DNA of 62,964 bases, the filler included, from Octopus bimaculoides (lineage: Eukaryota), in assembly GCF_001194135.2 (NCBI RefSeq). It is 5 parts of 4 records of this genome, joined end to end, with 100 filler letters (N's around TTAATTAATTAA, not from the genome) between each part and the next. Parts side by side here need not be neighbours in the genome. Positions count along the whole stretch, not along the records: positions 39,727 to 49,631 come from NC_069008.1; 4 more parts are not named here. The stretch is one strand, 5' to 3'. Below, in pieces: positions 40,580 to 49,631 of this stretch. Position 1 is the stretch's first letter; each line of letters begins with the position of its first letter. A program made the position numbers and the translations under genes. Below the pieces are notes generated by a model that worked only from the letters and a program-made list of their open reading frames with translations, made no database searches and was not told the origin of the DNA.

Positions 40580-41265
40580 CTGAAATAATGAAGAAACAGT
40601 ATTAGATATAGAAGAGAGATCAAAACGGTAATGTTACAACATATCTATATTAACAAAAGACGTCATATAACATTGGGTGAAATCTAAACATTTGTAAACT
40701 ACAACTACACCTTCACATTGTGTAACACACACACATATCTATATAAATCGCAGTGTCTTCAGAGTTCATCTGGCTCTGATTTCCAGTACTGTAATTAACA
40801 ACTAAAGTTGTCTTGAGTGTGTCATTCCATCTGTCCTTTGGTGAAACTTAGTCTACTTAGGAACATTCTGCTCAACATGGCTCACTGTAGCGTAGTGTTG
40901 TGTGCTCTGGAGTAAAGCAATCTGAATTAGATATGACCAGAGAAGCTAAAGAGAGGGGATGACAGCACGGAAGGCCACAGTCCCCCGGGACCCACGAAGG
41001 GTAAAGCTGAAAACCTGGTTATACTCAGAGACAGGAAGGGCGGAACCGAATACTCAATACACGGAATAAGTATTCCCGGATTTCTGGAAGCCAGATAAGA
41101 AATCCGGCACGTACGATGGATAGGTGTGTATATCTTACCTGTTATGCTATACAAATCGATATTTAGTGTGAAAATATATTTATTCACACCAAATCTCCGT
41201 GAAAACACACAAAATACGTTATAATCTTCCTACCGATTGAAACAGAATCTAGCGGAAATGAAAGT
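40580..41265 (-). other. ZNF A non-coding exon 1 (ends 41139) and intron (41138-40580)
   Basis: Minus-strand donor CAG|GTAAGA and acceptor TTTCTTCATTATTTCAG|, homologous to B. Confidence 0.7.
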
Positions 41266-42037
41266 ACACTGTGTCATGTGACTAAAGTAAATCAACCGCT
41301 CTCTAGTAAATAAAACCAAAAATGCTAACATAAAGGCAAAAACAGAAATATTTCGATGCAGATCACCATGGTTACTGTAGTTAATGTCTTGCTACGATAA
41401 ACAAATCTTCATTATTGTCAGGAGCGGCCTTGATGATTATCCAAAAGATATATTTATACTTAATTGTGGTTAACATTGCTTTTAGACGGCGAGGTGGCAG
41501 GATTGTTAGCGCGCTGGACGGAATGCTTCGTGGTATTTCGCCCGTTCTAAGTTCAAATTCCGTCGAGGTCGATTCCGCCTTTCATCCTTTTAGGGTCGAT
41601 GAAATAAGTACAAAATCTAACGATTTGATACCCTCAGGATTTTCACTGAGAAAAAAAAAAAAAAACTTTGATTTTTTGCGTGGAATGAATTAAATACCCT
41701 GATCTCATAATATGCCGCAAATCCCTTATTTTGGTTCGGGAAAAGGAGGGCCACCCCCACGGTCCTGGATTCATTGGAATTTTTTTTTTTNNNNNNNNNN
41801 NNNNNNNNNNNNNNNNNNNNNNNNNNNNNNNNNNNNNNNNNNNNNNNNNNNNNNNNNNNNNNNNNNNNNNNNNNNNNNNNNNNNNNNNNNNNNNNNNNNN
41901 NNNNNNNNNNNNNNNNNNNNNNNNNNNNNNNNNNNNNNNNNNNNNNNNNNNNNNNNNNNNNNNNNNNNNNNNNNNNNNNNNNNNNNNNTTCTCTATGGAA
42001 AAAAGAAAATTTCCAATGAATTCTAGACAGATTTCCT

Positions 42038-42107
42038 TAACTCTAACCCTAACCCTAAAACCCTAATACTAACCCGAACCCTAATACTAACCCTAAAACC
42101 TTAACCC
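42038..42107 (+). repeat. Degenerate (CCCTAA)n telomere-like array
   Basis: CTAACCCTAACCCTAAAACCCTAATACTAACCCGAACCCTAATACTAACCCTAAAACCTTAACCC. Confidence 0.75.
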
Positions 42108-42523
42108 GCGCGATTTTCACTCAAAGTACCAGTACACAGCATTTCATACGTGAAAATAATTTCCCATAGACTTTGATGTCTGAAGGGAGTCAACGAGGGA
42201 GTGCAAGCCTCTGTGTTTAAAATATATTACGGCGTGGGATTAACAGATTGGTGACAATGAATATAAGGTTAGTAATGTTCGTCATAATGGTTTGAAATCT
42301 TGCAACAGAGGCAGCGATTTGTGGGTATAGGACGAGTCGATTACAATCAAGTATAACATATGTTTTAGAACATCACCACCAAGGCCGCTTCTGACAATAA
42401 TTAAGATTAGCCAGGTATTAACCACAGTAACCATGGTGATTTGCATCAAAACATTATTATTTCCTTTCTTCTTTATCATAACATTTTTGGTTTTATTTAC
42501 TGGAGAGCAGTTGGTTTACTTTA

Positions 42524-42533
42524 GTCACATGAC
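42524..42533 (+). promoter_or_regulatory. GTCACATGAC E-box (CLEAR/M-box-like) upstream of ZNF exon 1; copies at 41273-41282 (-) and 48779-48788 (+)
   Basis: Identical 10-mer in all three paralogous upstream regions; matches GTCAYRTGAC bHLH-ZIP consensus. Confidence 0.45.
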
Positions 42534-42539
42534 ACACCG

Positions 42540-43467
42540 TACTTTGGTTGGCATTACAACTTGTTTGACGCGGGAGAATAATAATAACGTGTTTTTCTCT
42601 GTTTTACACAGAGATTTTGGTGTGAGTAAATATATTTTCCCACTAAATATTGATTTGTATAGCATAACAGGTAAGATATACACACCTATCCATCGATTGA
42701 TCGTACGTGCCGGATCTCTTATCTGGCTTGCAGAAATCCGGGAATAATGTAGCTTGTATTGAGTATTCGGTTCATCCTTTCCTTTACTGAAGATGATCGG
42801 GTTTCCAGCTTTACACTTTGTGGGTCCTGAGGGACTATGACCTTCCGTATCTCTTTAGCTTCTCTGGTCATATCTAATTCAGATTGCTTTACTCCAGAGC
42901 ACACAACACTACGCTTCAGTGAGCCATGTTGAGCAGAATGTTTCTAATTAGACTTAGGTTGGACAAAAGAACAGATGTAATGACACTCTAAAGACAAAAC
43001 AAGTAATTTCCTATTTTACGTCCGTAAAATCGATTCACAGTTGAAATTGCACCATTTAACACAAGTATTCTTGTTGCGGTGGACCTTGTGAGAAGTGTTT
43101 TTCATAGAGAGGTCGTTGGCCCAGCAATATGATAGAAGAAAATATTTTATATTTTCATTCCCTTTGAAATTGCTTTTATTCATAATTTGGGCTTTGACTG
43201 CCCTTTCTAGCATGTAAGGTGTCCTGTCAAAGGTCACGTCTTTCGTGTATAAATACTTAAACTGTTTATATGTATATATATATATATATATTGGCATACA
43301 CACACACATATATATACATACTTAATGTCTAGGTGTAATTGTGATTCACAAATTTTTAGATTTCACCCTATGTTATATGATGTCATTTATTAATCAATAT
43401 AGAAATGTTGGAACATTTCCGTTTTGATCTCTCCTCCATATCTAATACTGTTTCTTTATTATTTCAG
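42540..43467 (+). other. ZNF B non-coding exon 1 (ends 42670) and intron (42671-43467)
   Basis: Donor CAG|GTAAGA at 42670/42671 and acceptor TTTCTTTATTATTTCAG| at 43467, both conserved in paralog A; donor also conserved in C. TSS is approximate. Confidence 0.7.
42883..42918 (+). other. Candidate 36-nt (or 21-nt, from 42898) 5'-UTR micro-exon; equivalents at 49050-49085 (+) and 40886-40921 (-)
   Basis: CTAATTCAG| and TTTACTCCAG| acceptors plus CA|GTGAGC donor, inside a block nearly invariant in all three paralogs. Confidence 0.45.
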
Positions 43468-43832
43468 ATTAACAGATGACTTGGCATAAAACGACTTTTG
43501 TACATTGGATAATTGGAATTATTACCATGTGTTTTTGAAGACCAAAAGAAAATGTTGAATTACTGTGGAATATTTGCCGTGAGCTGAGATTTATTGCAAC
43601 ATTTCTCTTTCATTATCTGGTGCTTTTGCATTCTAATTCAACTTGAATATATTTGCAAAGCCATTTACACAAATTTAGATATGAATAACTTGATAGCAGC
43701 AGAAATATTTCTTAGGAATAAATTATAAAAAAAACAAGAAAAATAAAAGGTTGTTGAGAAAAGTTGGATAAGGGAAAAATTTAATACTGTGAGAAAGTTC
43801 AATGGTTGGATTTATTTGTATCCCTGAGAGAA

Positions 43833-44780
43833 ATGTCAAAAGCATTAGGGAAAGTAGGATATCGTTGTAAAATATGTGATAAATCATTCTCTACACATAG
43901 TAATTTGGTTAAACACATTCGTGTTCATACAGGTGAGAAGCCATTTTGCTGTGTTTCCTGTGGTAAATCATTCTGTCAAAATGGTAACTTAAGAATACAC
44001 ATGCGTATTCATACAGGAGAAGAACCATATCACTGTGATACCTGTGGTAAATCATTCTCTACTAAAGGTAACTTAATTAGGCACAAATTTATTCATACAG
44101 GTGAGAAGCCATTTCATTGTGATACCTGTGGTAAATCATTCCCTGAAAAGCATCACTTAACTAAACACATACGTACTCATACAGGAGAGAAGCCATATCA
44201 CTGTGTTATCTGTGGTAAATCAGTTTCTACAAAAGTTAATTCAACTAGACACATACGTATTCACACAGGAGAAAAACCATTTCACTGTGATGTCTGTGGT
44301 AAATCATTCTCTAGGAGTAGTGGCTTGATCACGCACAGGCGTACTCATACGGGAGAGAGACCATATAACTGTGATATCTGTGGTAAATCTTTCTTTAGAA
44401 TCTCTTACTTAATTCAACACAAACATACCCATACAGGAGAAAAACCATATAATTGTGATATCTGTGGAAAATCGTTCTCTACAACCTCTTATTTAATTCA
44501 ACACAAACATATTCATACTGGAGAAAAGCCATTTCAATGTCATGTCTGTGGTAAGTCATTCAGTGGGAGTAGTGACTTGACTAAACACAAACGTACTCAT
44601 ACTGGAGAAAAACCATATAATTGTGATATCTGTGATAAATCGTTCTCTCTGAGTAACAATTTAAATAGTCACAAACGTATTCATACAGGGGAGAGACCTT
44701 ATCACTGTGATGTCTGTAGTAAATCATTCTATCAGAGAAGTAACTTAACTAGACATAAATCTATCCATGTAAAAGTGTGA
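43833..44780 (+). CDS. C2H2 zinc-finger protein B: 315 aa, 11 tandem fingers, single coding exon, no recognisable KRAB/SCAN/BTB domain
   Basis: Intact [22 protein letters not shown]...SIHVKV*; 11 CxxC-x12-HxxxH repeats with TGE(K/R/E)P linkers; first in-frame ATG at 43833 (track start 43806 is TTG); finger 5 has lost its core F and L (V, S). Confidence 0.95.
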
Positions 44781-46984
44781 TTATATTATTGTCAAAATTT
44801 GTAGAACACCCAACGAGAACCAATATTTTAAAACCATTATCCCTTTTAAATCATAGCTTAACGTTTGTGCAATTAACAGTAATCATTGACCCCTTGGCAT
44901 TAAACATACCTGTTTCAAGTATAAAATTGCTCATGTATCTATTCCATATGGCATACCGCATGGATGTAGGAAAGATACTGTTGTTATATTTGATGTCGTT
45001 GGTAAATGATAAGACAGCAAACTGGCAGAATTGTTAGCATGTCTGGTAAAATGCTTGTCAGCATTTCATTTGTCTTTATTAAGTTATGGAAAGAAATGAA
45101 GGAAATGATCAAGTTGAAGATTGTATTTTGAAACCAAGAAGAAAGGAAAAACAGGGAAATGTTCCTTACACTCCCAAGAAGCATAAGGTTGTGGATAAAC
45201 CATTTCTCAAATTTGTGGAGAGTGAAGTGAAAAAAAATCAACCTAGGAGCCTTACCAAGGATGAGAAATGGGATATTCTCTCTGTATCAATCACATTTGT
45301 CATAAACATGTTGTGATGCACAGTAATAAGAAACATGTAAGCACACGTTTTTGTATCAAACTACATGCTTCCGCCACAAAAGGTGAACCCAGAATAAACA
45401 TTATATTTACACACAAAAATGTCTTGTGGTGTTTCATACTAACTGTTCTTCCATTCAATAACATGCATTTGACCAGCCATTATAAAATGGTATGTAATTA
45501 TGGTTCAGCTTTTTGTCTTAGATATCATAGATCTCTCTTCACATGTGTGGAACATTTGCTATGTGTAGGCTAATACATGTTCTACATATCATTAGAATAC
45601 TTTCTGGTGACTGGGTCTTCACTTGAATCCAATTAGTAGAAGCGTGCTACAGTATATGCAACAGTTGTGACGCAAATAATTTGTGCTATCAATTTACAGA
45701 TGAAAAAATTCCAAAAGGGAGAGGAAAGTGCATTGAGTTGTTAATTAAAAGCCATTTAACACAATTCTGTAAAATAGGGGACAACCAATTCGCGATGTAA
45801 TGCTATGATCAAATTTTTCATCACGAAAGTAATGGAACGCCGACCCTGAAATACATAGGTTATCCTGTCTTATTTACATACCTTTGCGTTCACCTTAACA
45901 CAAAATAGTTATTACATATAATTAAATTTAGTTTAACTAGACATTTGTTCACTTTTTGGTTGCTATCGCTATCGTGTATGTTACTTAAGAGAAAGTTGAC
46001 TTATTTATCTCCCCTTGACTTGTATTTTACTTTCAATCTCTACACACAAGATTACCAAACACCCAACGGGCGGTTTCGTCGATAATTTGTCCTTTGTTTG
46101 AACTGCATCGATGACATATATTAAAAGTCCTGAATATAATATTTGTTGTTGGCACTCCGTCGCTTACGACGTCGAGGGTTCCAATTGATCCAATCAACAG
46201 CTTGCTCGTGAAATTAACGTGCAAGTGGCTGAGCACTCCACAGACACGTGTACTCTTAACGTAGTTCTCGGGGATATTCAGCGTGACACAGTGTAACAAG
46301 GCTGACCCTTTGAATTACAGGCACAACAGAAACAGGAAGAAAGAGTGAGAGAAAGTTGTGGTGGAAGAGTACAGCAGGGTTCGCCACCATTCCCTGCCGG
46401 AGCCTCGTGGAGCTTTTAGGTGTTTTCGCTCAATANNNNNNNNNNNNNNNNNNNNNNNNNNNNNNNNNNNNNNNNNNNNNNNNNNNNNNNNNNNNNNNNN
46501 NNNNNNNNNNNNNNNNNNNNNNNNNNNNNNNNNNNNNNNNNNNNNNNNNNNNNNNNNNNNNNNNNNNNNNNNNNNNNNNNNNNNNNNNNNNNNNNNNNNN
46601 NNNNNNNNNNNNNNNNNNNNNNNNNNNNNNNNNNNNNNNNNNNNNNNNNNNNNNNNNNNNNNNNNNNNNNNNNNNNNNNNNNNNNNNNNNNNNNNNNNNN
46701 NNNNNNNNNNNNNNNNNNNNNNNNNNNNNNNNNNNNNNNNNNNNNNNNNNNNNNNNNNNNNNNNNNNNNNNNNNNNNNNNNNNNNNNNNNNNNNNNNNNN
46801 NNNNNNNNNNNNNNNNNNNNNNNNNNNNNNNNNNNNNNNNNNNNNNNNNNNNNNNNNNNNNNNNNNNNNNNNNNNNNNNNNNNNNNNNNNNNNNNNNNNN
46901 NNNNNNNNNNNNNNNNNNNNNNNNNNNNNNNNNNNNNNNNNNNNNNNNNNNNNNNNNNNNNNNNNNNNNNNNNNNNNNNNNNNN

Positions 46985-47259
46985 GGTTTTCAAACTTTTT
47001 GACTTGCGGACCCCTTTATATTTCAGGCTTTACCTTAGGGACCCCCTTATAAACGCTTATGAAATTTATACATAAATATTTGCTTAAAATAACATATATT
47101 TTTACATTTATTTATTTAACAGTATTTAACAAATAGGTTTATTGTCAATTAAAAGATTTCGATTAAAAACCATATATAAAATCAAATTGCCCATAAAAAG
47201 TATTTGCTGTCCACGGAACCCCTGTCTTGTCCTTGCGGACCACAGTTTGAAGACTCCTG
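46985..47259. mobile_element. hAT-like non-autonomous element (left end in gap)
   Basis: GGTTTTCAAACT...AGTTTGAAGACTCCTG termini typical of CAG-GG-TCAAAC hAT MITEs. Confidence 0.55.
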
Positions 47260-47841
47260 ATCTAATCGACTGGCCCCGTCCCCAAAAATCGAATCTTTTG
47301 TTCGTAGAGCAAAAAGGATTTTTAATATGAACTTTTTAATTATCGAATGGCTGTGGTTATCCATACGATTGAAACAAGAATCGAACGTAGTCTGTATGTA
47401 TTAAAAAGGGGGTGGGGTGAGAATCACTGAGATAAACAATAAATTCGTATGCAGAAGGGTGTCTCGACATGGTTACTGAAGCTGCTAAAATAGCAGCCAA
47501 ATATCCCTGCTGTCACGTAATATTGAAAGAAGGATTTCGATCTTAGGTTTGTTTATTGAACTGATAGATCCGATTAGTTTAGCTAATTAAAAACACCCAC
47601 AGTTGGCAGTGACGTTAATGATTTAATAATTTTTCCTTCGTTTTTGACATCAGTGACTTATACTAAAAGATCCTAACATCATTTAATAAATTCAGAAACA
47701 CCTTCCATTCGGCTAATTTTATTCAAGTTGTAGAAAGAGGAAGGGTGACCCACTTTTCGACACTTCTATCGACATATTTCTACATCGAGTTATCCCCACC
47801 AACATTCACTAAAAGTTTATTTTCCTGAACTTTGTGCCAGG

Positions 47842-49308
47842 ACACAGCATTTCATACGTGAAAATAATTTCCCATTGACTTTGATGTATAAAGGAAGACG
47901 ATGCGAGAGTGCAAGCTTATGTGGTTAAAATATATTACGGTGTGGGATTAACAGACGGTTGACAAAGAATATAAGGTTAGTAATATTAATCATAATGGTT
48001 TCAAATCTTGCAAGGACAGCGATTTGTGAGTATAGGACAAGTCGATTACATCGATGTCAGAGTTTCAATATTACTTTATTTCATCGACCCTGGGAGGTTA
48101 AAAGATAAAGTCAACTCCGGCGGAATTTGAAGTTAGGCTGTAGCGACGGGTGAAATTCCGCTAAACATTTCTTCAAGTGCGTTAACGGAAACTATTCAAT
48201 AGTCGTGGTCTCGGTGCCCACGCACGCGCATCCACGGTAACTAGTCGTGACTAATCGATCCTACAACGACTATCTAGCGCGGTCAGGTACAAAGACTAAT
48301 AACCTATTCTTATCCTCTCAACCCCATCCTCCGTTGTATTTGCACATCATAGATTCATCTATTTCTACGATCTGCCCAAGTCCACCAGTTTGGTAGGGGT
48401 TACGCAAAAGATAATTGTAATGTCCCTCATGTACTGATACCATTGAAAAACAGTAGATTTTGAAAGACCGACTTTTTAATGGACTCTTTACCAAAAACAG
48501 GCAGTGTATAATTTGTTTACTTTAGAAAAAACCCTCATACATGTTTTGCGCATGATGCGCACTTACGCTTGGTAGTCGTAGGATCGATTAGTCACGACTA
48601 GCTAGCGCGAGTGCGCGCACCGGCAGGACTCCTCTTGAAGAATACCTTTTAGAACTTCACAACCAAGGTCGCTGCTGGCAATAACGAAGATTCGTTCATC
48701 ATAGCCAGATATTAACTACACAAAGCATGATCATTTGCATCAAAATATTATTTACTAGAGAACGGTTGGATTACTTTCGTCACATGACATTCCATACTTC
48801 CGTTATAAACTGTTTCACAACAGGTAAGATATATGCACCTATTTATCGACAGATCGTACGTGCCGAACTGCTTATTTGGCTTATAGGAAATCCGGGAATA
48901 CTTATACCGTGTATTGAGTATGTGATTTCCCCCTTCCTGTCTCTGAAGATGTCCAGGTTTTCAGCTTTACACTTTGTGGGTCCTTAGGGACTGTGGCCTT
49001 CCGTGCTGTCACCCCCATCTGTTAGCTTCTCTGGTCATATCTAATTCAGATTGCTTTACTCCAGAGCACACAACACTACGCTACAGTGAGCCATGTTGAG
49101 CAGAATGTTCCTAAGTAGACTAAGTTTCACCAAAGGATAGATCTAATGACACACTCAGGACAACACGGGATAATTCCCTATTTTATGTCCGTAAAATCAA
49201 TTCAAAGTTTAAATTGCACCAATGAATTGCACAAGTATTCTTGATGCAGTGGACCTTATGAGAAATGTCTTTCAGAGAGAAGTCGTGGGCCCAGCAATAT
49301 GATAGAAG
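47842..49308 (+). other. Third ZNF unit C: upstream region, shortened exon 1 (donor 48823/48824) and intron; coding exon not present in this block
   Basis: Colinear similarity to 42134-43138 (B) and to the reverse complement of A; followed by a SINE fragment and the spacer at 49632. Confidence 0.8.
48214..48621. mobile_element. MITE-like insert in the upstream region of ZNF unit C
   Basis: Inverted repeats CTAGTCGTGACTAATCGATCCTAC(AAC)GACTA at 48241-48272 and 48573-48601; absent from the aligned regions of A and B. Confidence 0.55.
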
Positions 49309-49631
49309 GATGATAACTGTATGGTGCTTAAATATATCAGGGACACATCCACCAGAATATGAAAAAAGCATAGAAAATATGGCGGACATAAGAGGGAAGT
49401 GAACCGCATAAGATGGAATTTCTTTATTTTGACGGAATCTGTTCAGATTAAAAAAATTTTTTTTTAGATATATCAGTTCTTTAGTCTTGCGCTGACCAAA
49501 ACGTTGTGAGATGGAAACTGAAAGAAGCCCGTCGTATATATATTTATGTAGGTGTGTGTCTGGGTTTGGCCCCAAACATCCCTTGACAATTGATGCTGGT
49601 GAATTTATGCACCGTAACTTGGTGGTGGTGG

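What the first reader, a model, noticed from the sequence alone, without database searches (positions are those of the whole stretch)
40834..49137. Near-invariant 116-bp intronic block shared by three ZNF paralogs
Seen: 40834-40949 (minus) and 49022-49137 are identical over 116 bp, and 42855-42942 differs at 1 of 88, while the flanking intron and promoter carry many substitutions and indels. The block holds a branch-like CTAAT, two AG acceptors and a CA|GTGAGC donor that define a 36- or 21-nt ATG-free micro-exon. Inference: a shared post-transcriptional or enhancer module of this ZNF subfamily (regulated UTR micro-exon, intronic ncRNA such as an H/ACA-type RNA given AGAGCA, or a TF site cluster), or a gene-conversion tract.
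Basis: partly seen in the sequence, partly recalled or inferred. Interest (0 to 1): 0.7.

Follow-up and report, generated by a model that had tools for sequence, protein, structure and literature searches.

The report
Conserved non-coding block in ZNF paralogs
Three duplicated zinc-finger gene 5' regions share a real, almost invariant ~90-116 bp non-coding block that looks most like a small untranslated exon with its splice signals, kept alike by selection and/or gene conversion; this is an ordinary kind of finding and could not be confirmed without transcripts.

Summary
40834-40949(-) equals 49022-49137(+) at 116/116 bases, and 42855-42942 differs from them at one base (42916). Flanks differ by 17-23% plus indels, and no column shuffle (0/20000) reproduces the invariant run. 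The block sits at the same collinear position in three paralogous 5' regions. Two of these (A, B) lead into C2H2 zinc-finger ORFs; the coding region of the third (C) lies outside the piece.

The three-way identity starts exactly at a polypyrimidine-tract/TTAG acceptor. That acceptor ranks 1st, 2nd and 5th among the copies' AG sites. A GTGAGC donor follows 60 nt later, and identity continues 24 nt beyond it (52 nt in A/C). The two other A-B identity peaks also lie on predicted splice junctions.

No structured RNA is supported: Rfam gave no match and folds are no better than shuffles. The region is also a recombination mosaic, with an A-B-only tract at the exon-1 donor and an A=C-only tail. Short-tract gene conversion therefore contributes and could explain everything.

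No transcripts, orthologues or further copies could be reached. Verdict: a real feature, a new member of a known kind, of low-to-moderate interest.

The parts
40834..40949 (-). Block copy A (116 nt), in the 5' region of the minus-strand ZNF gene A
   Evidence: Identical to copy C at 116/116. It lies collinear within homologous flanks.
42855..42942 (+). Block copy B. This is the three-way invariant core (88 nt); similarity to A/C continues to about 42970 at roughly 75%.
   Evidence: 87/88 against A/C, with the mismatch at 42916. A-B exact runs of 66 and 26 nt.
49022..49137 (+). Block copy C (116 nt), in a paralogous 5' region whose CDS is outside the piece
42859..42918 (+). Predicted 60-nt ATG-free non-coding exon in B: acceptor TCTCTTTAG| at 42850-42858, donor |GTGAGC at 42919-42924
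   Evidence: Acceptor ranks 5/69 in a rough PWM scan; the donor (TCA|GTGAGC) falls outside B's eight listed top donors of 80. The exon is ATG-free. No transcript evidence.
49026..49085 (+). Predicted 60-nt exon in C
   Evidence: Acceptor ranks 2/53 and donor ACA|GTGAGC ranks 4/55.
40886..40945 (-). Predicted 60-nt exon in A
   Evidence: Acceptor ranks 1/71 and donor ranks 3/78.
42919..42942 (+). 24 nt of invariant sequence just after the donor (GTGAGCCATGTTGAGCAGAATGTT). It contains a GCCATGTT (YY1-consensus-like) octamer at 42923-42930.
   Evidence: Invariant in all three copies. Motif positions. Any factor binding is inference only.
42612..42670 (+). Context: end of predicted exon 1 of B with donor CAG|GTAAGA (intron starts at 42671). 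The same donor occurs in A (exon ends at 41139, minus strand) and C (exon ends at 48823).
   Evidence: Top-scoring donor in all three copies. A-B identity is 0.94-0.98 here.
43468..44780 (+). Context: last exon of B (acceptor TTATTTCAG|ATTAAC). It holds 365 nt of 5' UTR and then the CDS 43833-44780 (315 aa, 11 C2H2 fingers).
   Evidence: The acceptor region is 0.90-0.92 identical between A and B.

Best explanation
The block is a small non-coding (5'-UTR) exon module of this ZNF subfamily. It consists of a polypyrimidine tract and TTAG acceptor, a 60-nt ATG-free exon, a GTGAGC donor, and about 24 nt (52 nt in A/C) of adjacent intronic sequence that probably helps the spliceosome or a splicing regulator recognise the exon. 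It lies between a non-coding exon 1 (donor CAG|GTAAGA) and the single large exon that carries the rest of the 5' UTR and all the zinc fingers. Including or skipping it would change only the leader of the mRNA.

Its near-invariance among paralogs that differ by about 20% elsewhere is maintained by purifying selection on the splice or leader signals. Short-tract gene conversion between copies, for which the conserved island itself supplies the homology, probably reinforces this.

Shown: the identity, its boundaries, the splice-site motifs and their ranks, the absence of RNA structure, and the recombination mosaic. Inferred: that the exon is used, and what its inclusion does.
For: (1) Three-way identity begins exactly at the AG acceptor. 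The upstream polypyrimidine tract varies but stays pyrimidine-rich in all three copies.
(2) That acceptor ranks 1/71 (A), 2/53 (C) and 5/69 (B) among all AGs of each 5' region. The donor 60 nt downstream ranks 3/78 and 4/55 in A and C. 60 nt is a normal internal exon size.
(3) The A-B identity profile over the whole gene has three peaks, and all lie on predicted splice junctions: the exon-1 end and donor (0.94-0.98), the block (0.94-1.0), and the acceptor of the coding exon (0.90-0.92). The CDS is only 0.66-0.90. The exon-1 island has the same geometry as the block: roughly 55-60 nt before a strong GT and roughly 25 nt after it.
(4) The segment is ATG-free and keeps the same orientation relative to the gene in all three copies.
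(5) Constraint is needed to explain one change in 88 across three copies whose flanks differ by 17-23%.
(6) Precedent: the BGW element, a conserved motif in 5'-UTR exons of paralogs with divergent coding regions, is maintained by gene conversion (PMC1274310).
Against: There is no transcript evidence of any kind. The source species and its relatives are absent from every searchable collection. UTR exons are normally less conserved than coding sequence, not more. Identity runs past the donor by 24-52 nt, so the exon alone does not explain the block. The donor has a weak exonic side (ACA| or TCA|), and B's only substitution worsens it. The A=C tail (0/28 differences where B has 7/28) and the A-B-only tract at exon 1 show that conversion alone can produce such islands.
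Confidence: 0.4

Rival explanations
1. Pure short-tract interlocus gene conversion, or a recombination mosaic. On this reading the block has no function of its own. It is where recent conversion tracts of about 100 nt between the copies happen to overlap, with its left edge set by the indel-rich, divergent polypyrimidine stretch that stops heteroduplex extension.
For: The region is demonstrably mosaic. At 42659-42745 A-B differ at 2/76 sites while A-C and B-C differ by 0.18-0.20. In block positions 89-116 A=C (0/28) while B differs at 7/28. The breakpoint test gives Fisher p=3e-4. A and B are close head-to-head neighbours, an arrangement known to favour arm-to-arm conversion (own knowledge). 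Tract sizes of 100-150 nt are typical (PMC1274310 background).
Against: It needs at least two independent recent events covering the same 88 nt with the same left boundary in three copies. No comparable identical tract exists in the roughly 430 nt of shared CDS, which has the longest homology. GC content of the block (0.41-0.42) is not raised over its upstream flank (0.46), so there is no sign of GC-biased conversion.
Confidence: 0.25
2. An intron-1 cis-regulatory DNA element (a transcription-factor site cluster, enhancer or alternative promoter) shared by the subfamily and read as double-stranded DNA rather than as RNA.
For: It lies about 185 nt downstream of the exon-1 donor, within a 5' region that has several other invariant islands, such as GTCACATGAC at 42524-42533 and ATCGTACGTGCCG at 42700-42712. 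It contains a GCCATGTT octamer that fits the YY1 core consensus GCCATNTT, and a TAATT homeodomain-type core (motifs from own knowledge; positions). Every-base invariance over about 90 nt is typical of densely packed binding sites.
Against: It gives no reason for the block to begin exactly at a strong acceptor and to hold a good donor 60 nt later. Short motif matches are expected by chance. No binding or chromatin data are available. No TATA or Inr arrangement at sensible spacing was seen on reading the sequence.
Confidence: 0.2
3. The block encodes a small structured RNA: an H/ACA snoRNA, a miRNA or mirtron, or a spliced-leader-type RNA.
For: It has an AGAGCA hexamer (ANANNA form), sits in an intron, is about 100 nt long, and has a GT donor in the middle as in SL RNAs.
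Against: The Rfam E-value scan found nothing at any copy. The MFE of the block on both strands is worse than shuffles (z from +0.4 to +1.3). The best 70-90-nt windows in all copies and strands have z from -0.4 to -1.5 and are not single hairpins. The only ACA after AGAGCA comes about 15 nt later, with no hairpin between them. There is no conserved Sm-type site; the tail differs in B. No conserved long-range partner was found.
Confidence: 0.03
4. The perfect identity is partly an assembly artefact. In a gapped short-read scaffold, near-identical repeats are collapsed to one consensus and re-used in each copy, so the true identity could be, for example, 95-98%.
For: The piece has N-gaps of estimated size and many repeats. 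The block is longer than common k-mer sizes.
Against: Copy B keeps a private substitution inside the block, and the flanks join without gaps. Collapse would itself require the copies to be much more alike than their flanks, so the feature would still be real.
Confidence: 0.07
5. A fragment of a dispersed transposable element unrelated to ZNF genes.
For: The piece is rich in SINE-like and TIR elements.
Against: In all three copies the block lies at the same position inside collinear homologous flanks, with no termini or target-site duplications of its own. It has no similarity to the SINE or TIR elements in the piece. Genome-wide copy number could not be tested.
Confidence: 0.05

Closest known systems
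BGW element in 5'-UTR exons of mammalian BEX/WEX/GASP paralogs (Winter & Ponting 2005, PMC1274310)
   Same: A short conserved non-coding motif in the leader exons of clustered paralogs whose coding regions are much more divergent. It is maintained by repeated interlocus gene conversion, and its suggested role is in translation or alternative splicing.
   Different: There, exon status and orthologues in several mammals were available and GC enrichment was seen. Here there are no transcripts, only one genome and three copies, and no GC enrichment.
Highly conserved regulated cassette exons with conserved flanking intron, such as the ultraconserved 'poison' exons of SR-protein genes (own knowledge)
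   Same: A near-invariant exon plus tens of nucleotides of adjacent intron, with intact splice sites. Conservation exceeds that of the neighbouring coding sequence.
   Different: Those are conserved between orthologues across vertebrates and act by introducing premature stop codons in the coding region. This block is shared by paralogs, lies in the 5' UTR, and its inclusion is unproven.
Arm-to-arm or interlocus gene conversion in inverted and tandem duplicates, such as globin genes and sex-chromosome palindromes (own knowledge)
   Same: Pair-specific tracts of about 100-150 nt of near identity in otherwise diverged copies, producing a mosaic phylogeny. A and B form a head-to-head pair.
   Different: The block is shared by all three copies with common boundaries, whereas the other tracts are pair-specific.
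H/ACA box snoRNAs hosted in introns
   Same: Intronic location and an ANANNA-type hexamer.
   Different: No hairpins, no correctly placed ACA box, and no Rfam match.

Membership tests
Internal (cassette) exon of a spliced 5' UTR | AG acceptor preceded by a polypyrimidine tract | tested here: met
   The acceptors are CCCCTCTCTTTAG| (A), GTATCTCTTTAG| (B) and CCCCCATCTGTTAG| (C). They rank 1/71, 5/69 and 2/53 in a rough PWM scan.
Internal (cassette) exon of a spliced 5' UTR | GT donor close to the consensus at a normal exon length | tested here: met
   ACA|GTGAGC (TCA|GTGAGC in B) lies 60 nt after the acceptor. It ranks 3/78 in A and 4/55 in C, and lower in B.
Internal (cassette) exon of a spliced 5' UTR | Presence in mature transcripts (junction reads) | not testable with these tools
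   No transcript or read data are available for the source species. Exact-protein look-ups and DNA scans found nothing.
Interlocus gene-conversion tract | Phylogenetic incongruence or a mosaic of pair-specific identity along the alignment | tested here: met
   There is an A-B-only tract at 42659-42745 (2/76 differences) and an A=C-only tail at block positions 89-116. Breakpoint test p=3e-4. This holds for the region; for the three-way core itself the test is uninformative.
Interlocus gene-conversion tract | Paralogs within a species more alike than orthologues between species | not testable with these tools
   No related genome could be reached.
Interlocus gene-conversion tract | Local GC enrichment from biased conversion | tested here: not met
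   Block GC is 0.41-0.42, the upstream flank 0.46, the downstream flank 0.38, and the whole piece 0.365. This is a weak test at this length.
H/ACA snoRNA | Two hairpins separated by an H box (ANANNA), with an ACA 3 nt from the 3' end | tested here: not met
   Folds are no better than shuffles on either strand. The only ACA downstream of AGAGCA is about 15 nt away, with no hairpin between.
H/ACA snoRNA | Match to a curated covariance model | tested here: not met
   The Rfam 15 E-value scan of the piece returned only microsatellite-driven mir-297-type hits at 43263-43322.
miRNA precursor / mirtron | A stable single hairpin of about 60-90 nt | tested here: not met
   The best 70-90-nt windows reach at most -22 kcal/mol, are multibranched, and have z from -0.4 to -1.5.
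Spliced-leader RNA gene | Leader plus GT donor followed by a conserved Sm-binding site (RAU4-6GR), within stem-loops | tested here: not met
   No such site is conserved; the tail after position 93 differs in B. There is no stable structure.
Dispersed transposable element | Own termini or target-site duplication, and occurrence independent of the flanks | tested here: not met
   The block occupies the same collinear position in three homologous 5' regions. Genome-wide distribution was not testable.
YY1-type transcription-factor site | Core GCCATNTT | tested here: inconclusive
   GCCATGTT is present and invariant at 42923-42930, 49090-49097 and 40874-40881. An 8-mer match is not evidence of binding.

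The most novel reading that the evidence does not exclude
The block is a family-wide, near-ultraconserved splice or leader module: a 60-nt 5'-UTR exon plus a downstream intronic element. Through it, one trans-acting factor (a splicing regulator or a small RNA) would co-regulate a whole lineage-specific expansion of C2H2 zinc-finger genes post-transcriptionally. Gene conversion would keep the module uniform while the fingers diversify.
Probability: 0.12. Interest if true: 0.5.

Novelty: new member of a known kind. Interest (0 to 1): 0.22.

Why it matters
If the block really is a regulated leader exon or regulatory module common to a lineage-specific ZNF expansion, it would provide a handle on how large, fast-evolving zinc-finger families are controlled together. 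It would also be a clean case of a non-coding module evolving in concert while the coding part diverges, as with the BGW element. If it is only a conversion tract, it documents short-tract exchange between diverged neighbours, which is unremarkable. In both cases it is a useful marker for finding the other members of this subfamily in the source genome.

Tried and rejected
- **Structured ncRNA.** Rfam gave no match. Folds of the 116- and 146-nt segments and a sliding 70/90-nt fold scan on both strands of all copies were no better than shuffles. Rejected.
- **tRNA or SINE origin of the block.** ARAGORN found none, and the block has no similarity to the piece's SINE-like copies. Rejected.
- **Long-range RNA pairing of the block with the rest of each pre-mRNA.** The best duplexes fall within the range of the shuffled null, reaching at most about 1.9 sd below it in copy B. 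Dropped.
- **Coding potential.** Two frames of the 60-nt segment are open. However, on direct reading of the sequence the following exon has stops in all frames within 30 nt in B, and exon-1 frames are not conserved between A and B because of indels. The minus-strand ATG gives only a 12-codon ORF. The downstream sense uORF MLSRMFL... is not conserved beyond the invariant DNA. Rejected.
- **Finding more copies or transcripts.** Two ZNF protein searches timed out. An N-terminal query found nothing. A linker-masked query found only remote ZNFs. The best of these, P0001, is 52-56% identical, and its locus L001 has no block. Four exact-protein look-ups of window ORFs were not on record. Block 24-mers are absent from metagenome contigs and viral contigs.
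- **Organism identification.** Not achieved. A cephalopod or mollusc was my guess from the ZNF expansion, the SINEs and CCCTAA-type repeats, but it stays unverified and is not used in the argument.
- **U12-type intron signals and an Inr/TATA arrangement in the block.** Considered by eye only; the spacing does not fit.
Full report
**What is in the piece.** The usable sequence is 39727-49631 (36.5% GC, two N-gaps). It holds three paralogous 5' regions.
- Copy A is on the minus strand. Its C2H2 zinc-finger ORF starts at the ATG at 40153 and runs to the piece edge.
- Copy B is on the plus strand. Its ORF at 43833-44780 encodes 315 aa with 11 C2H2 fingers and no other domain.
- Copy C (about 47830-49310, plus strand) is homologous to the B upstream and 5' region, but the piece ends before any coding sequence.

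A and B lie head to head across gap 1, and C follows B after gap 2. 'Three ZNF paralogs' is therefore verified for two coding regions and one 5' region.

**Gaps.** No block copy, and no part of the flanks aligned to it, touches an N-run. The nearest gap edge is more than 840 nt away. Continuity across the gaps cannot be shown.
- The two edges of gap 1 carry a 23-nt inverted match (41769-41790 versus 41999-42021, 91%). This fits the centre of the A/B inverted duplication lying inside the gap.
- The flanks of gap 2 share nothing meaningful.

Only arguments that rest on the physical proximity of the copies depend on the scaffolding.

**Check of the observation.**
- The reverse complement of 40834-40949 equals 49022-49137 over 116/116 bases. 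The match ends immediately on both sides.
- 42855-42942 matches at 87/88. The one difference is 42916 (T for A).
- A 34-mer from the block occurs exactly three times in the window at up to 3 mismatches, against 0 expected.
- In a three-way alignment, 87 of 88 block columns are invariant, against 180 of 273 outside. None of 20000 column shuffles gave an 88-column window with 1 or fewer variable columns; the best shuffle had 8.
- Pairwise distances directly upstream are 0.17-0.23, with several indels, including an 11-nt gap in B right before the block.

The block is real.

**Anatomy.** The three-way invariant core is 88 nt.
- It starts with TTAG, preceded in every copy by a variable but pyrimidine-rich stretch: CATCCCCTCTCTTTAG in A, CCGTATCTCTTTAG in B, CACCCCCATCTGTTAG in C.
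- Sixty nucleotides later comes ACA|GTGAGC (TCA|GTGAGC in B).
- Identity then continues for 24 nt in all three copies (GTGAGCCATGTTGAGCAGAATGTT). It continues for 28 more nt in A and C only, where B differs at 7 of 28 sites.

- The block-edge acceptor ranks 1st of 71 in A, 2nd of 53 in C and 5th of 69 in B.
- The donor ranks 3rd of 78 in A and 4th of 55 in C, and lower in B.
- The exon-1 donor CAG|GTAAGA is first in all three copies.
The first follows the proposed CTAAT branch point by only 5 nt.

The best-defined unit is therefore a canonical 60-nt exon: B 42859-42918, C 49026-49085, A 40945-40886. It contains no ATG.

It cannot extend the protein. On direct reading of the sequence, the next exon, whose acceptor is TTATTTCAG|ATTAAC and which starts at 43468, has stops in all three frames within 30 nt in B. 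The exon-1 frames are also not conserved between A and B.

**Conservation profile.** Along the whole A-B alignment, identity in 50-nt windows peaks at three places:
- 42616-42690, the end of exon 1 plus its donor: 0.94-0.98;
- 42852-42950, the block: 0.94-1.0;
- 43401-43475, the acceptor of the coding exon: 0.90-0.92.

The coding region itself is 0.66-0.90. All three peaks lie on predicted splice junctions. The exon-1 island has the same layout as the block, with about 55-60 nt before a strong GT and about 25 nt after it. This is the main positive argument that the block is an exon with its junctions.

**What it is not.**
- The Rfam E-value scan finds nothing at any copy. The only hits are microsatellite-driven mir-297-type matches at 43263-43322.
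- ARAGORN finds no tRNA.
- The block and its 146-nt surroundings fold worse than shuffled sequence on both strands (z from +0.4 to +1.3).
- The best 70-90-nt windows in all copies and strands have z from -0.4 to -1.5 and are not single hairpins.
- The AGAGCA hexamer is followed by an ACA after only about 15 nt with no hairpin between. H/ACA, miRNA/mirtron and spliced-leader-type RNAs therefore fail their defining features.
- No long-range pairing partner in the pre-mRNA stands out from the null.
- The block is not an independent transposon insertion. It occupies the same collinear position in homologous flanks and resembles none of the repeats in the piece.

**Selection or gene conversion?** The region is a mosaic.
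- From 42659 to 42745, A and B differ at 2 of 76 sites while both differ from C by 0.18-0.20.
- Upstream of the block all pairs differ by 0.17-0.23.
- In block positions 89-116, A and C are identical while B differs by 0.25.
- A breakpoint scan on the informative sites gives Fisher p=3e-4.

Short exchanges of about 100-150 nt between copies have therefore happened in this family. The A=C extension to 116 nt is better explained by such an exchange than by constraint that B lacks; the chance of 0/28 differences at the A-C background distance is about 0.005.

For the three-way 88-nt core, pure conversion would need at least two recent events covering the same segment with the same left edge. No such tract is seen in the longer homologous coding region, and there is no GC enrichment.

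I therefore favour constraint on a functional module, with conversion helping to keep it uniform. The conserved island would itself provide the uninterrupted homology that conversion needs (own knowledge). I give a sizeable probability to conversion alone.

A published precedent for this combination is the BGW element of BEX/WEX/GASP genes. It is a conserved motif in 5'-UTR exons of paralogs with divergent coding regions, sustained by gene conversion, with a suggested role in translation or alternative splicing (PMC1274310).

**DNA-element rival.** The block contains GCCATGTT, which fits the YY1 core GCCATNTT (own knowledge), and a TAATT core. The surrounding 5' region has other invariant islands: GTCACATGAC at 42524-42533 and ATCGTACGTGCCG at 42700-42712. 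A transcription-factor cluster in intron 1 cannot be excluded. It does not explain why the block starts at a strong acceptor and carries a good donor 60 nt later.

**Limits.** No external sequence could be brought in.
- Full ZNF protein queries timed out.
- An N-terminal query had no candidates.
- A query with the linkers masked returned only remote ZNFs. The best hit is 52-56% identical, and its locus lacks the block.
- Four exact look-ups of window ORFs were not on record.
- Two 24-mers of the block are absent from the metagenome and viral collections.

The organism was not identified. Because the piece is a gapped short-read scaffold, consensus collapse could have turned very high identity into perfect identity. 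It could not have created the island itself.

**Verdict.** This is a genuine, statistically solid conserved non-coding block in paralogous ZNF 5' regions.
- Most likely (about 0.4) it is a 60-nt leader exon with its splice signals, kept uniform by selection and gene conversion.
- Gene conversion alone is about 0.25.
- An intronic DNA regulatory element is about 0.2.
- A structured RNA is essentially excluded.

It is a new member of a known kind and of low-to-moderate interest. Transcript junctions, a genome-wide BLAST and one sister-species comparison would settle the question.

Noticed in passing
window 41070-41207 (minus) and 42600-42745 (plus): A second near-identical island is shared only by A and B. 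It covers the end of exon 1, its CAG|GTAAGA donor and about 75 nt of intron. The copies differ at 2/76 sites, plus one 8-nt indel, while C differs from both by 18-20%. It looks like a conversion tract between the head-to-head neighbours.
   Followed up: partly
window 39727-41790 versus 41989-44260, centre at gap 41791-41988: A and B form a diverged inverted duplication (palindrome-like, arms about 80% identical). A 23-nt inverted match lies right at the two gap edges (41769-41790 / 41999-42021), so the assembly gap probably sits at the palindrome centre.
   Followed up: partly
window 48225-48617: Copy C carries an insertion bounded by 46-nt inverted repeats that are 85% complementary, resembling a MITE or DNA transposon. 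Together with a SINE-like copy it separates C's distal upstream homology (47834-48050, equivalent to 42126-42345 in B) from its proximal promoter (48702 onward). C may therefore be a disrupted gene.
   Followed up: partly
window 41470-41640 (+), 48050-48200 (-), 45000-45100 (+): There are two diverged copies and one fragment of the same SINE-like repeat, which ends in ...AGGGTCGATGAAATAAGTA. ARAGORN and Rfam do not call a tRNA in them.
   Followed up: partly
window 42040-42110: A degenerate interstitial CCCTAA-type (TTAGGG telomere-like) repeat tract lies just upstream of copy B. It has no counterpart in A or C.
   Followed up: no
window 42524-42533, 48779-48788, 41273-41282 (minus): The palindromic decamer GTCACATGAC is invariant in all three copies, within a conserved island about 140 nt (B) or about 40 nt (C) upstream of the exon-1 donor. 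It is a candidate core-promoter or bHLH-type site.
   Followed up: no
window 42700-42712, 48853-48865, 41105-41117 (minus): An invariant CpG-rich 13-mer, ATCGTACGTGCCG, lies about 30 nt into intron 1 in all three copies. It contains a TACGTG core. Retention of three CpGs in an AT-rich genome suggests constraint or lack of methylation.
   Followed up: no
window 41076-41107: Copy A has a perfect 10-bp inverted repeat, CCGGATTTCT...AGAAATCCGG, with a 12-nt spacer. B has one mismatch in it, and in C it is degenerate.
   Followed up: no
window 43000-43320 and 49165-49310 versus 40760-40810: B and C share about 140 nt of intron just after the block at 88-90% identity that A lacks entirely; in B a further roughly 180 nt with no counterpart in A follows. 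This indicates a deletion in A, or an insertion in the B/C ancestor, directly 3' of the block.
   Followed up: no
window 43263-43322: A (TA)n/(CA)n microsatellite gives sub-threshold Rfam hits to mir-297, mir-1277 and mir-3149 on both strands. These are low-complexity artefacts.
   Followed up: yes
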